From Sminthopsis crassicaudata (lineage: Eukaryota): DNA of 64,000 bases. This document shows positions 50,328-53,300 of the stretch, piece after piece. Numbering within the stretch: the stretch's first letter is position 1; each line of letters starts with the position of its first letter. The DNA lies in assembly GCF_048593235.1 (NCBI RefSeq), contig NC_133618.1, positions 504,513,675 through 504,577,674 on the forward strand. Reading direction: 5' to 3'. The notes beneath the pieces were generated by a model. It saw only the letters and a program-made list of their open reading frames with translations, searched no databases and was not told the origin of the DNA. A program made the translations under genes and the position numbers.

Positions 50328-53300
50328 ATGGTGAGCTATTCTGCTTTTTAGCGGGACCTTGGGTCTAACTCTATCCATCTCCATCCACTCTTTGCGGGCC
50401 GCAGCAAAGCAGCCTCTACCTGGGAAGGCTCCAGAGGGTCCCTCCGGAGGACCTAGGGTTGCGGGATGAGGGAAGCACCTATAACAGAGACGGAGGTTGG
50501 GCGGTTCTCGGACGGAGGGAAGGCCGCCGGGCCCGAGCCAGGACGCCGTGGCAGAGGGGCTTGCCCCTCTCTGCGGGTTGCCTGGCGGTCCTTGGCGACC
50601 CTCGAGGCCAGTGGTCAGACAGGCTGCACGACGGGCCCGTATCTGGGGCTTCACGGCGGTGGTGACGAGCGGGAGTGGGCTGGTTGGACTTCGCATCCGG
50701 GAACTGGGCTTGAGTCGTTGCACGTTACTCCAGGAAGGATTGAAAATGTGGCCTCAGCTAGGCGGACGATGGGCTGGAAGAAAACCTCAGGTCCAGCTTC
50801 GTGTTTTGTCCGGGGCCGGCCAGAAGCAGCCTGGTCGCCCCGGGTCTCAGATGGGCTGTGATAGCGCGCGTATCGCGCACTTTGTTTGAGGACCGAATGA
50901 GTTACCGGTGAAGTTTTTAGTTCCGTTCCTATGGGAGTAGGTGCTGTGTAAATGCTTCCTTGCTCGGTGGCTTATCCAGTTCTCTTGCCAAAGCAAATAG
51001 CGTTTGTTAGGCTGCAAGGCTTGGAGCCACCATATTGGGTGCTTTGGTTCCCCCATTCCCTTGTATTTAGAGATGGGCAAATCGCTTGCAGCTTTGTAAA
51101 AGTCCTTCCTGGAAGCAGAAGTTAAAACCTTGATTCTATGAAGTGTTCTTTACACTACAGATTATGACCAAGAAGTAAGAATAGAATCATAGACCTAGGG
51201 GAAGGAAAAAAAATTTCAAAGGCCATTCCTTCTAAATTTTTTTTTAAAGGTAAATTAGGAAAGTTGTATTTTTCTCCAGAGGTCTAAGTGGGATTTGAAC
51301 CTATTTTGACTTGAGTCAAGGATTTATGGGAGAAGTACAGCTGAGAGGGCTCACTGGGATTTTTTTTTTTTTTTTTTTAAGCCAAAAGGGAAGAAGGCCA
51401 AGGGGAAGAAGGTGGCTCCGGCCCCTGCTGTTGTAAAGAAGCAAGAGGCCAAGAAAGTGGTCAATCCTTTGTTTGAGAAACGGCCCAAAAACTTTGGCAT
51501 TGGTAAGTGATGGTAATGTGTGGTGTGTGGGTAAACTCGAATGTGCTAAAGCATTAAGCAAATGACCCCCAGATACTAGTGGGAATTGGAGAAAAGAATC
51601 TAAGAACTTGGGTGTTGGTAATAGACTCCACCGAGAGTTAACAGTTGTGCAAATGATGGAAAAGAATATTTGCTATCTTGAATGATGGTGATGACATTTC
51701 ATAACCACCAAGATCACTGATGCACTCTGTCAATTAAAACAATCTGAATTAAGGATTGCAAGATTCACAATACTTTTTTTTTATTAGGTCAGGACATCCA
51801 GCCCAAAAGGGACCTTACTCGATTTGTCAAATGGCCTCGCTACATCAGACTTCAGCGTCAAAGGTCTATCCTGTACAAACGTTTGAAAGTTCCACCAGCA
51901 ATTAACCAGTTTACCCAGGCTTTAGATCGTCAGACAGGTAAAAAAAAAAACAAAACTAGCCTTTTCTATTCTCTGTAAAAGAATTGTAGGTATAGGTTTT
52001 TAATATTTTTAAGGGTTACATCTTGTAACACAAATGCCTAAAACTTGCCAAATTGCTTATGGAAAAGATAGGGTGTTGTATATGTACATATGCTCTGTAA
52101 ATGTTCTGATGTCCAGGTTAATATCTCATTATTTGTTGTGGTGGTGGTGGTGGTTTTTGTTTTTTGTTTTTTTTTTTTTAAGTAACTTAAAATCCGTTAA
52201 TTTCTGTAGTAACTGGAGGAATATGTGCAGATGATGATTACAATATTTGCTATCTGAGTAGCAATGATTACATATTTAACCACCAAGATCGCTGATGCAC
52301 CAGATATAAGGAATACAAAAATAGTTGTTTTAAAACCAGTATCTTAACCGACAAACTTCTTGTTCCAGCTACTCAACTGCTTAAACTAGCTCACAAATAC
52401 AGACCTGAGACAAAACAAGAAAAGAAACAAAGGCTGCTGGCTAGGGCTGAACAAAAAGCTGCAGGCAAAGGAGATGTCCCCACTAAGAGACCACCTGTCC
52501 TCAGAGCAGGTAAATTAGTTCTGTGTCTAAAACTGATTGTTTTTAGTATGTGAATCTTAGCAAGCTGTTGCAATGATGTATGAATTTCTTCACCTGAAAT
52601 AATTGTGTAGATCAAATACACGAGCTTTTTAACCCTGAGCCATAGCTGAAGATTCATGGTTTATTATTTTTTTTAATTAGTAAGAAAGCAGTAAATCAGT
52701 AACAGAACCCATGCACATTCTGGTTATGTTTTTTAGGTGTTAACACTGTTACTACCCTGGTAGAAAACAAGAAAGCACAGTTGGTAGTGATTGCACATGA
52801 TGTGGACCCCATTGAGGTAAGTTCTGAGCTTGGGAGATTGTAAAAAGGGGTGGGAATGTGGTATTAGGAGTAACAATGAAATATGCTGGAATTTTATTTC
52901 TAGTCTGTCATGTTGAATGTGAATGTGTTTTGTTTCCTGAAGTATTTTTAAAGGGACTGAAATCCCATAGCAAATGGGATTTTTGGCTTTTGCAATGATG
53001 TATGAATTTCTTCACCTGGATTAATAGCATGGAGAATAAATATACGAGCTTTTTAACCCTGAGCAAATGCCAAAAGACAAGTTACTCTTTTCCCCCCTCC
53101 CCCCTTGTGTGGTTAAGTACTCTGTAGACTTAATTATTCATATGTCTTCCAGCTGGTGGTCTTCCTACCTGCTTTGTGCAGGAAAATGGGGGTTCCTTAC
53201 TGTATTATCAAAGGTAAAGCCAGACTGGGTCGCTTAGTTCACCGAAAGACTTGCACGAGCATTGCCTTCACACAGGTTAACCCGTAAGTATATTTTATTC

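What the first reader, a model, noticed from the sequence alone, without database searches (positions are those of the whole stretch)
51647..52300. Two U24 snoRNAs whose D' registers may target adjacent 28S nucleotides
Human RPL7A has one U24, in intron 2; here intron 3 carries a second complete copy. The intron 3 copy has a canonical D' (GCTAT-CTGA), so the fifth-nucleotide rule gives C2352 (old human numbering). The intron 2 copy has an extra T (GCTATC-TTGA). If TTGA (51678-51681) is its D', the fifth nucleotide is c51673, which pairs with the neighbouring G2351, the equivalent of yeast Gm1450 guided by yeast U24. Duplication may thus have split two adjacent methylations between paralogues. 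Both keep the D-box guide for C2338. The register shift is inference, since CTTG as D' would keep the C target.
Basis: partly seen in the sequence, partly recalled or inferred. Interest (0 to 1): 0.7.

Follow-up and report, generated by a model that had tools for sequence, protein, structure and literature searches.

The report
Second U24 snoRNA in marsupial RPL7A
The ribosomal-protein gene RPL7A in this (apparently marsupial) genome carries two intact copies of the rRNA-methylation guide U24 instead of one, but a published experiment on exactly the one-letter change that separates their internal boxes says both copies most likely still aim at the same two cytosines of 28S rRNA.

Summary
Rfam finds two complete SNORD24/U24 box C/D snoRNAs on the + strand, at 51648-51724 (RPL7A intron 2, 85.3 bits) and at 52226-52299 (intron 3, 68.0 bits); the gathering score is 41. 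Both guide elements are identical in the two copies (25 of 25 nt), whereas the spacers are only about 42% alike. Each copy lies 63 or 69 nt from its 3' splice site.

The proposed one-nucleotide register shift is unlikely. Van Nues and Watkins (PMC5389607) made the same change in the human U24 C'/D' motif, inserting a U between the C and the U of D' (CUGA to CUUGA). The methylated site did not move. A C just before a D' box that lacks its own 5' C acts as the first letter of a five-letter D' box and sets the ruler. Both copies therefore most likely guide the C2338- and C2352-equivalent sites redundantly.

A minority reading stays open: that the intron 2 copy acts on both G2351 and C2352. Human Gm2351 still has no assigned guide.

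The result is a new paralogue of a known snoRNA, of modest interest.

The parts
51647..51725 (+). U24/SNORD24 copy 1 (RPL7A intron 2), including the 5-bp terminal stem GUGCA/UGCAC. It is the positional orthologue of human SNORD24.
   Evidence: Rfam RF00069, 85.3 bits at 51648-51724. The terminal stem and an outer ACAG/CUGU stem are predicted. The 3' end lies 63 nt from the 3' splice site.
51653..51659 (+). Copy 1 box C, AUGAUGG
51665..51676 (+). Copy 1 D' guide, AAUAUUUGCUAU. G51672 pairs with the C2352-equivalent nucleotide and C51673 pairs with the G2351-equivalent nucleotide.
   Evidence: identical to copy 2 (12/12)
51677..51681 (+). Copy 1 D' box, CUUGA. It can be read as the 4-nt UUGA (51678-51681) preceded by C51677, or as a 5-nt extended D' box.
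   Evidence: Sequence. The same change was tested in the human U24 motif (PMC5389607).
51688..51694 (+). Copy 1 box C', GUGAUGA (consensus), preceded by an overlapping AUGAUGG at 51682-51688
51703..51720 (+). Copy 1 D guide AACCACCAAGAUC (51703-51715), then A51716, then box D CUGA (51717-51720). The fifth nucleotide upstream is a G, which pairs with the C2338-equivalent nucleotide.
52225..52300 (+). U24/SNORD24 copy 2 (RPL7A intron 3), including the terminal stem GUGCA/UGCAC. This is the extra paralogue.
   Evidence: Rfam RF00069, 68.0 bits at 52226-52299. The 3' end lies 69 nt from the 3' splice site.
52231..52237 (+). Copy 2 box C, AUGAUGA (perfect consensus)
52242..52257 (+). Copy 2 D' guide AAUAUUUGCUAU (52242-52253) followed by the canonical D' box CUGA (52254-52257)
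52264..52270 (+). Copy 2 box C', AUGAUUA. It is degenerate: the G that should pair with the C of D' in stem II is a U.
52278..52295 (+). Copy 2 D guide AACCACCAAGAUC (52278-52290), then G52291, then box D CUGA (52292-52295)
50328..53928 (+). Host gene RPL7A, from the start codon to the stop codon. Exon 1 ends at 50330, exon 2 is 51382-51502, exon 3 is 51788-51937 and exon 4 is 52369-52509. The later exons run to the stop codon TAA at 53926-53928.

Best explanation
RPL7A in this genome hosts two functional U24 (SNORD24) box C/D snoRNAs, released from introns 2 and 3 by splicing and exonucleolytic trimming. Earlier notes of this scan call the genome a dasyurid marsupial; I did not check that.

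Each copy carries the same two guides. The D guide places the C2338-equivalent nucleotide of 28S rRNA five base pairs from box D.

The D' guide of the intron 3 copy places the C2352-equivalent nucleotide five base pairs from a canonical CUGA. In the intron 2 copy the D' box has gained one U (CUUGA). There, C51677 still pairs with the G of the consensus C' box (GUGAUGA). It therefore still marks the 5' edge of the D' box that Nop56 and fibrillarin measure from, and the box behaves as a five-letter D' box. Methylation stays on the C2352-equivalent nucleotide.

The two copies are therefore redundant guides for the same two cytosines, not a division of labour.

Shown here: the anatomy, the paralogy and the selective pattern on the guides. 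Inferred: expression of both copies, and the absence of a register shift. The second inference rests on a yeast reporter experiment done with the human U24 motif.
For: Both copies exceed the Rfam gathering score by a wide margin over the full model length.

The functional elements (stems, boxes, guides) are 54/58 identical between the copies, against 10/24 for the spacers (Fisher p 1.5e-6). The 25 guide nucleotides are all identical. The flanking intron sequence is unrelated, with 35/74 and 36/75 matches in gapped alignments, about the same as the spacers. This means both guides of both copies have been kept by selection since an old duplication.

Both copies lie on the host strand, 63 and 69 nt upstream of the 3' splice site. 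That is close to the position known to favour processing of intronic box C/D snoRNAs (Hirose and Steitz 2001, from my own knowledge).

The loop from the GA of D' to the UGA of C' is 7 nt in both copies, so the extra U is not compensated elsewhere.

Direct experimental precedent: in the human U24 C'/D' motif, changing CUGA to CUUGA left the methylated nucleotide unchanged, whereas U-CUGA shifted it by one (PMC5389607 section 11). A C at the last guide position of U18 moved methylation to +6 and reduced +5 to background. The authors conclude that the 5' C of D' is the determinant of the ruler.

The C' box of copy 1 (GUGAUGA) matches the box C' consensus RUGAUGA. By my recollection it is also the sequence of the human U24 motif used in that experiment.
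Against: The reporter experiment was done in yeast, with an artificial guide and primer-extension read-out. [quoted passage not shown]

Snu13/15.5K anchors on the sheared G-A pairs, which argues for UUGA as the structural core of the box.

No 28S sequence or methylation map of this species was available.

Copy 2 has a weakened stem II (C' is AUGAUUA), so its D' guide may be the less accurate or less active one. That would leave room for some functional difference between the copies.
Confidence: 0.6

Rival explanations
1. UUGA (51678-51681) is the D' box of the intron 2 copy, so the fifth-nucleotide rule moves its target to the G2351-equivalent nucleotide. The intron 3 copy keeps C2352. The duplication has split two adjacent methylations between the paralogues.
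For: The G-A dinucleotide, which forms the sheared pairs bound by Snu13/15.5K, is the structural anchor of a D' box (introduction of PMC5389607), and UUGA keeps it. The guide would still pair over 12 bp in the shifted register. Human Gm2351 has strong experimental support and no assigned guide (PMC5027482; PMC11550049). The register of the U24 D' guide has differed in evolution: yeast and Arabidopsis U24 put A1449/A1459 at +5 and G1450/G1460 at +6, while vertebrate U24 puts C2352 at +5.
Against: The identical insertion in the human U24 motif did not move the methylation site. A C before a D' box without a 5' C resets the ruler to that C. Humans make Gm2351 with only the canonical U24, so no dedicated guide is needed. 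The zebrafish catalogue (PMC7668251) accounts for G2351 only by allowing a +5/+6 double modification there. It does not name the guide in the text I could read; I infer it is the A2350 guide, SNORD76, since G2351 lies one nucleotide 3' of A2350.
Confidence: 0.12
2. Dual specificity. The intron 2 copy forms two alternative C'/D' structures, using the 4-nt UUGA or the 5-nt CUUGA. It methylates both the G2351- and the C2352-equivalent nucleotides from one guide, as yeast U18 and snR13 do for adjacent sites.
For: Overlapping four- and five-letter D' boxes, with a non-C first letter preceded by a C or U, are the feature proposed to give two-site methylation in U18 and snR13. Yeast and Arabidopsis U24 methylate +5 and +6 from the D' guide. 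Primer extension could have hidden a weak second site in the CUUGA mutant.
Against: The CUUGA mutant of human U24 was scored as modifying a single site. In U18 a C at the last guide position abolished the +5 site rather than giving two sites. The C' box of copy 1 has no insertion like the one in U18.
Confidence: 0.15
3. The difference is not biological, or one copy is not functional. Either the extra T is an assembly error or a private polymorphism, or one of the two copies (or one of the two D' guides) is an unexpressed or inactive relic.
For: No reads could be laid on the stretch. The C' box of copy 2 is degenerate (AUGAUUA) and its Rfam score is 17 bits lower. MFE folding of copy 2 does not recover the terminal stem.
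Against: The T lies in a run of only two T. Both copies keep every box, both guides and the terminal stem while their spacers have diverged to about 42% identity. That pattern is not expected of a decaying copy.
Confidence: 0.08

Closest known systems
Human SNORD24 (U24), RPL7A intron 2
   Same: Same host gene and same intron as copy 1. Same two guides, for 28S C2338 (box D) and C2352 (box D'). It belongs to Rfam family RF00069, which both copies match over the full model length. By my recollection its C' box is also GUGAUGA, as in copy 1.
   Different: Human has one copy, with a canonical CUGA D' box. Here the orthologous copy has CUUGA, and a second copy with CUGA but a degenerate C' box sits in intron 3.
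Artificial snoRNA 'hU24 D'1 Uins' of van Nues and Watkins (PMC5389607)
   Same: Same D' sequence change (CUGA to CUUGA, so the last guide letter is C and the box reads UUGA), placed next to a consensus C' box.
   Different: It is a laboratory construct expressed in yeast with a guide against 18S S1316. Here the change is natural, in a vertebrate U24 with its native 28S guide.
Yeast U24 (snR24) and Arabidopsis U24
   Same: Same family and the same rRNA region. Their D' guide methylates the G equivalent to human G2351.
   Different: Their register puts the A (yeast A1449) at +5 and the G at +6. One snoRNA makes both from a non-consensus C'/D' motif. They do not methylate the C2352 equivalent.
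Chicken GGgCD38 (U24) in RPL7A
   Same: An intronic U24 in RPL7A with the same two predicted cytosine targets.
   Different: It is catalogued as a single copy. Chicken has two U36 copies, whereas this window has three.
Other extra intronic snoRNA paralogues noted in this genome (for example a second SNORD35 in RPL13A intron 3)
   Different: Different snoRNA family and different host gene.

Membership tests
SNORD24 / U24 (Rfam RF00069) | Covariance-model score above the curated gathering score over the full model length | tested here: met
   85.3 and 68.0 bits against a gathering score of 41, both over model positions 1-76
SNORD24 / U24 (Rfam RF00069) | Box C (RUGAUGA) near the 5' end, box D (CUGA) near the 3' end, and a terminal stem | tested here: met
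   Box C is AUGAUGG or AUGAUGA, box D is CUGA, and the stem is GUGCA/UGCAC in both copies
SNORD24 / U24 (Rfam RF00069) | Two conserved antisense elements of about 12 nt against 28S rRNA, upstream of D' and of D | tested here: met
   AAUAUUUGCUAU and AACCACCAAGAUC are identical in both copies and agree with the Rfam consensus at its conserved (upper-case) positions. Pairing to this species' own 28S was not tested because no rDNA is in the window.
SNORD24 / U24 (Rfam RF00069) | Intronic, on the host strand, in RPL7A in vertebrates | tested here: met
   Introns 2 and 3 of RPL7A, 63 and 69 nt from the 3' splice sites; the human and chicken host gene is given
SNORD24 / U24 (Rfam RF00069) | A stable, fibrillarin-associated nucleolar RNA, i.e. 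expression of the mature snoRNA | not testable with these tools
SNORD24 / U24 (Rfam RF00069) | Guides 2'-O-methylation of the C2338- and C2352-equivalent nucleotides | not testable with these tools
   This needs RiboMeth-seq or primer extension in this species
Box C/D snoRNAs with dual-site C'/D' motifs (yeast U18, snR13, snR48, U24 type) | A D' box lacking the 5' C, with an overlapping longer box that starts one nucleotide upstream | tested here: met
   Copy 1 has UUGA preceded by C51677; the definition is in PMC5389607
Box C/D snoRNAs with dual-site C'/D' motifs (yeast U18, snR13, snR48, U24 type) | A non-consensus C' box (for example an inserted nucleotide) or an accessory guide that supports two structures | tested here: not met
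   The C' box of copy 1 is the consensus GUGAUGA with no insertion
Box C/D snoRNAs with dual-site C'/D' motifs (yeast U18, snR13, snR48, U24 type) | Two nucleotides of one target region methylated by one guide, both lost when the snoRNA is removed | not testable with these tools
   This needs a knock-out plus a methylation map

The most novel reading that the evidence does not exclude
The natural CUUGA D' box of the intron 2 copy places the G2351-equivalent nucleotide wholly or partly in the fibrillarin active site. This lineage would then have a U24 paralogue that writes the orphan Gm in the Am-Gm-Cm triplet of 28S rRNA, either alone or together with Cm. That would be a natural case in a vertebrate of target-register evolution by a one-letter change in a D' box after duplication.
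Probability: 0.2. Interest if true: 0.6.

Novelty: new member of a known kind. Interest (0 to 1): 0.3.

Why it matters
The extra copy is one more example of intronic snoRNA paralogues arising within a ribosomal-protein host gene. It adds a lineage-specific difference in snoRNA gene content, which is of interest for annotation but not surprising.

The more useful point is that the orthologous copy carries, as a natural variant, the exact D' box insertion that was engineered into human U24 to test what sets the 'five-nucleotide ruler'. A canonical paralogue with the same guide sits beside it as an internal control. Copy-specific deletion in a marsupial cell line would test in a vertebrate whether the 5' C of D' or the G-A core sets the methylated position. 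It would also bear on the unassigned human Gm2351.

Tried and rejected
Only local folding, alignment and scripts touched them.

Cross-species comparison of RPL7A introns 2 and 3. This was not done. The genome collection on hand holds bacteria and archaea only. A protein route would need the spliced RPL7A model, and the joined step is left out by instruction. Single exons are too short to find full-length relatives in the word search. The large representative search was not justified for a well-known protein.

Qu et al. 1995 (the original U24 paper, PMC307091) and the platypus snoRNA paper are not held.

Supplements of the human and zebrafish RiboMeth-seq papers are not held. I therefore could not read which zebrafish SNORD was given G2351 as a +6 site.

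Paper searches for a SNORD24 knock-out with a methylation read-out found nothing relevant.

Reading AUGAUGG (51682-51688) as the C' box was rejected, because it abuts D' with no loop.

MFE folding is uninformative for K-loops and gave z-scores near -1, as expected for box C/D snoRNAs.

Full report
WHAT IS THERE

The stretch lies inside RPL7A on the + strand. Exon 1 ends with the start codon at 50328-50330, behind a pyrimidine (TOP-like) tract. Exon 2 is 51382-51502, exon 3 is 51788-51937 and exon 4 is 52369-52509. The stop codon is at 53926-53928.

Rfam finds exactly two SNORD24 (U24) matches in the 64 kb window, both full length. One is at 51648-51724 in intron 2 (85.3 bits). The other is at 52226-52299 in intron 3 (68.0 bits). 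The gathering score is 41. Three SNORD36 matches follow in introns 4 to 6. The statement that human has a single U24 in intron 2 is backed by PMC3412847. Chicken is catalogued with one copy (PMC2653536).

ANATOMY

Copy 1:
- stem GUGCA, 51647-51651
- box C AUGAUGG, 51653-51659
- D' guide AAUAUUUGCUAU, 51665-51676
- CUUGA, 51677-51681
- box C' GUGAUGA, 51688-51694
- D guide AACCACCAAGAUC, 51703-51715
- box D CUGA, 51717-51720
- stem UGCAC, 51721-51725

Copy 2:
- the same stems
- box C AUGAUGA, 52231-52237
- the same D' guide, 52242-52253
- D' box CUGA, 52254-52257
- box C' AUGAUUA, 52264-52270
- the same D guide, 52278-52290
- box D CUGA, 52292-52295

The 3' ends lie 63 and 69 nt from the 3' splice sites. 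That is close to the position known to favour processing of intronic box C/D snoRNAs (Hirose and Steitz 2001, from my own knowledge).

ARE BOTH REAL GENES?

Stems, boxes and guides are 54/58 identical between the copies. Spacers are 10/24 identical (Fisher p 1.5e-6). All 25 guide nucleotides are identical. The introns around the two copies are unrelated. That is the signature of an old duplication in which both guides of both copies stayed under selection. It is not the signature of a recent copy or a decaying one.

Copy 1 resembles the family consensus in its spacers too, and it lies in the ancestral intron. It is therefore the orthologue of human SNORD24, and copy 2 is the derived paralogue.

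Expression could not be examined. 

THE REGISTER QUESTION

If UUGA (51678-51681) is the D' box, the fifth nucleotide upstream is C51673. That nucleotide pairs with the G just 5' of the usual target C.

That G is human G2351 (Gm2364 in the newer numbering) and corresponds to yeast Gm1450. Human 28S carries Am2350, Gm2351 and Cm2352 in a row. SNORD76 is assigned to the A and SNORD24 to the C. The G has 'strong experimental evidence' but no assigned guide (PMC5027482). So the idea addresses a real gap.

It runs against a direct experiment, however. Van Nues and Watkins (PMC5389607) put the human U24 C'/D' motif into an artificial snoRNA in yeast and made this very change. [quoted passage not shown] That is, the site did not move. 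A U inserted before the C did move it. In U18, changing the last guide nucleotide to C moved methylation to the +6 site and reduced the +5 signal to background.

Their conclusion is that the C at the 5' edge of D' pairs with the G of the last GA of C', builds the Nop56 binding site, and thereby positions fibrillarin. [quoted passage not shown]

Copy 1 has this C (51677) and a consensus C' box, GUGAUGA. By my recollection that is also the C' sequence of the human U24 motif they tested. The loop from the GA of D' to the UGA of C' is 7 nt in both copies, so nothing compensates for the extra U.

The best-supported reading is therefore a five-letter D' box, CUUGA, with the target unchanged at the C2352 equivalent. 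The two copies would then be redundant.

WHAT STAYS OPEN

- The experiment was done in yeast, with another guide, and read by primer extension. [quoted passage not shown] A partial second methylation could have escaped.
- Overlapping four- and five-letter D' boxes are their explanation for two-site methylation by U18 and snR13.
- Yeast and Arabidopsis U24 do methylate two adjacent nucleotides from the D' guide.
- Copy 2 has its own blemish. Its C' box has a U where the G that pairs with the C of D' should be, and this may weaken or loosen its D' function.

Humans make Gm2351 with only the canonical U24. The zebrafish catalogue (PMC7668251) accounts for G2351 only by allowing a +5/+6 double modification there. 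It does not name the guide in the text I could read; I infer it is the A2350 guide, SNORD76. So a dedicated G guide is not needed to explain the methylation.

COMPARISON AND NOVELTY

Both copies pass every sequence-level test for SNORD24 membership. Expression and methylation are untested.

The second copy in intron 3 is, as far as the held literature shows, not described. It belongs with other extra snoRNA paralogues noted in this genome. Earlier notes of this scan call the genome a dasyurid marsupial and report a second SNORD35 in RPL13A intron 3. Those are AI notes that I did not check.

This is a new member of a known kind. Its main value is as a natural version of an engineered D' box mutant, sitting beside a canonical paralogue with the same guide.

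NOT DONE

- No reads were laid on the stretch.
- No comparison with other species was made.
Joined exons were translated only locally, to number the introns.
- The N run at 47338-47636 was left alone.

Noticed in passing
window 52568-52643, 52990-53067, 53499-53562 (+): There are three SNORD36 copies in RPL7A introns 4 to 6, and they appear to have divided their functions. The first has both guide elements with intact D' (CUGA) and D boxes. The second reads CUGG at D', so the G-A is broken, but it keeps the D guide. The third (33.5 bits, just above the gathering score of 30) keeps the D' guide and CUGA but has lost the D guide. Chicken is catalogued with two copies that each carry both guides (PMC2653536).
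   Followed up: partly
window 50270-50330 (+): RPL7A exon 1 is a short leader that begins in a pyrimidine (TOP-like) tract, CTCTTCTCTTCCTTTCTC, and ends with the start codon ATG directly at the splice donor (ATG|GTGAGC). Intron 1 is 1051 nt.
   Followed up: partly
window 52148-52180 (+): A (GGT)n microsatellite and long T runs lie in intron 3, about 50 nt upstream of the second U24 copy. The two introns share no similarity outside the snoRNA, so there is no trace of the duplication mechanism.
   Followed up: no
window 51682-51694 (+): The intron 2 U24 copy has two overlapping C'-like motifs, AUGAUGG and GUGAUGA, six nucleotides apart. The Rfam consensus shows the same doublet (uGauGguGaUGA). 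The intron 3 copy has lost the first motif.
   Followed up: no
   Followed up: no
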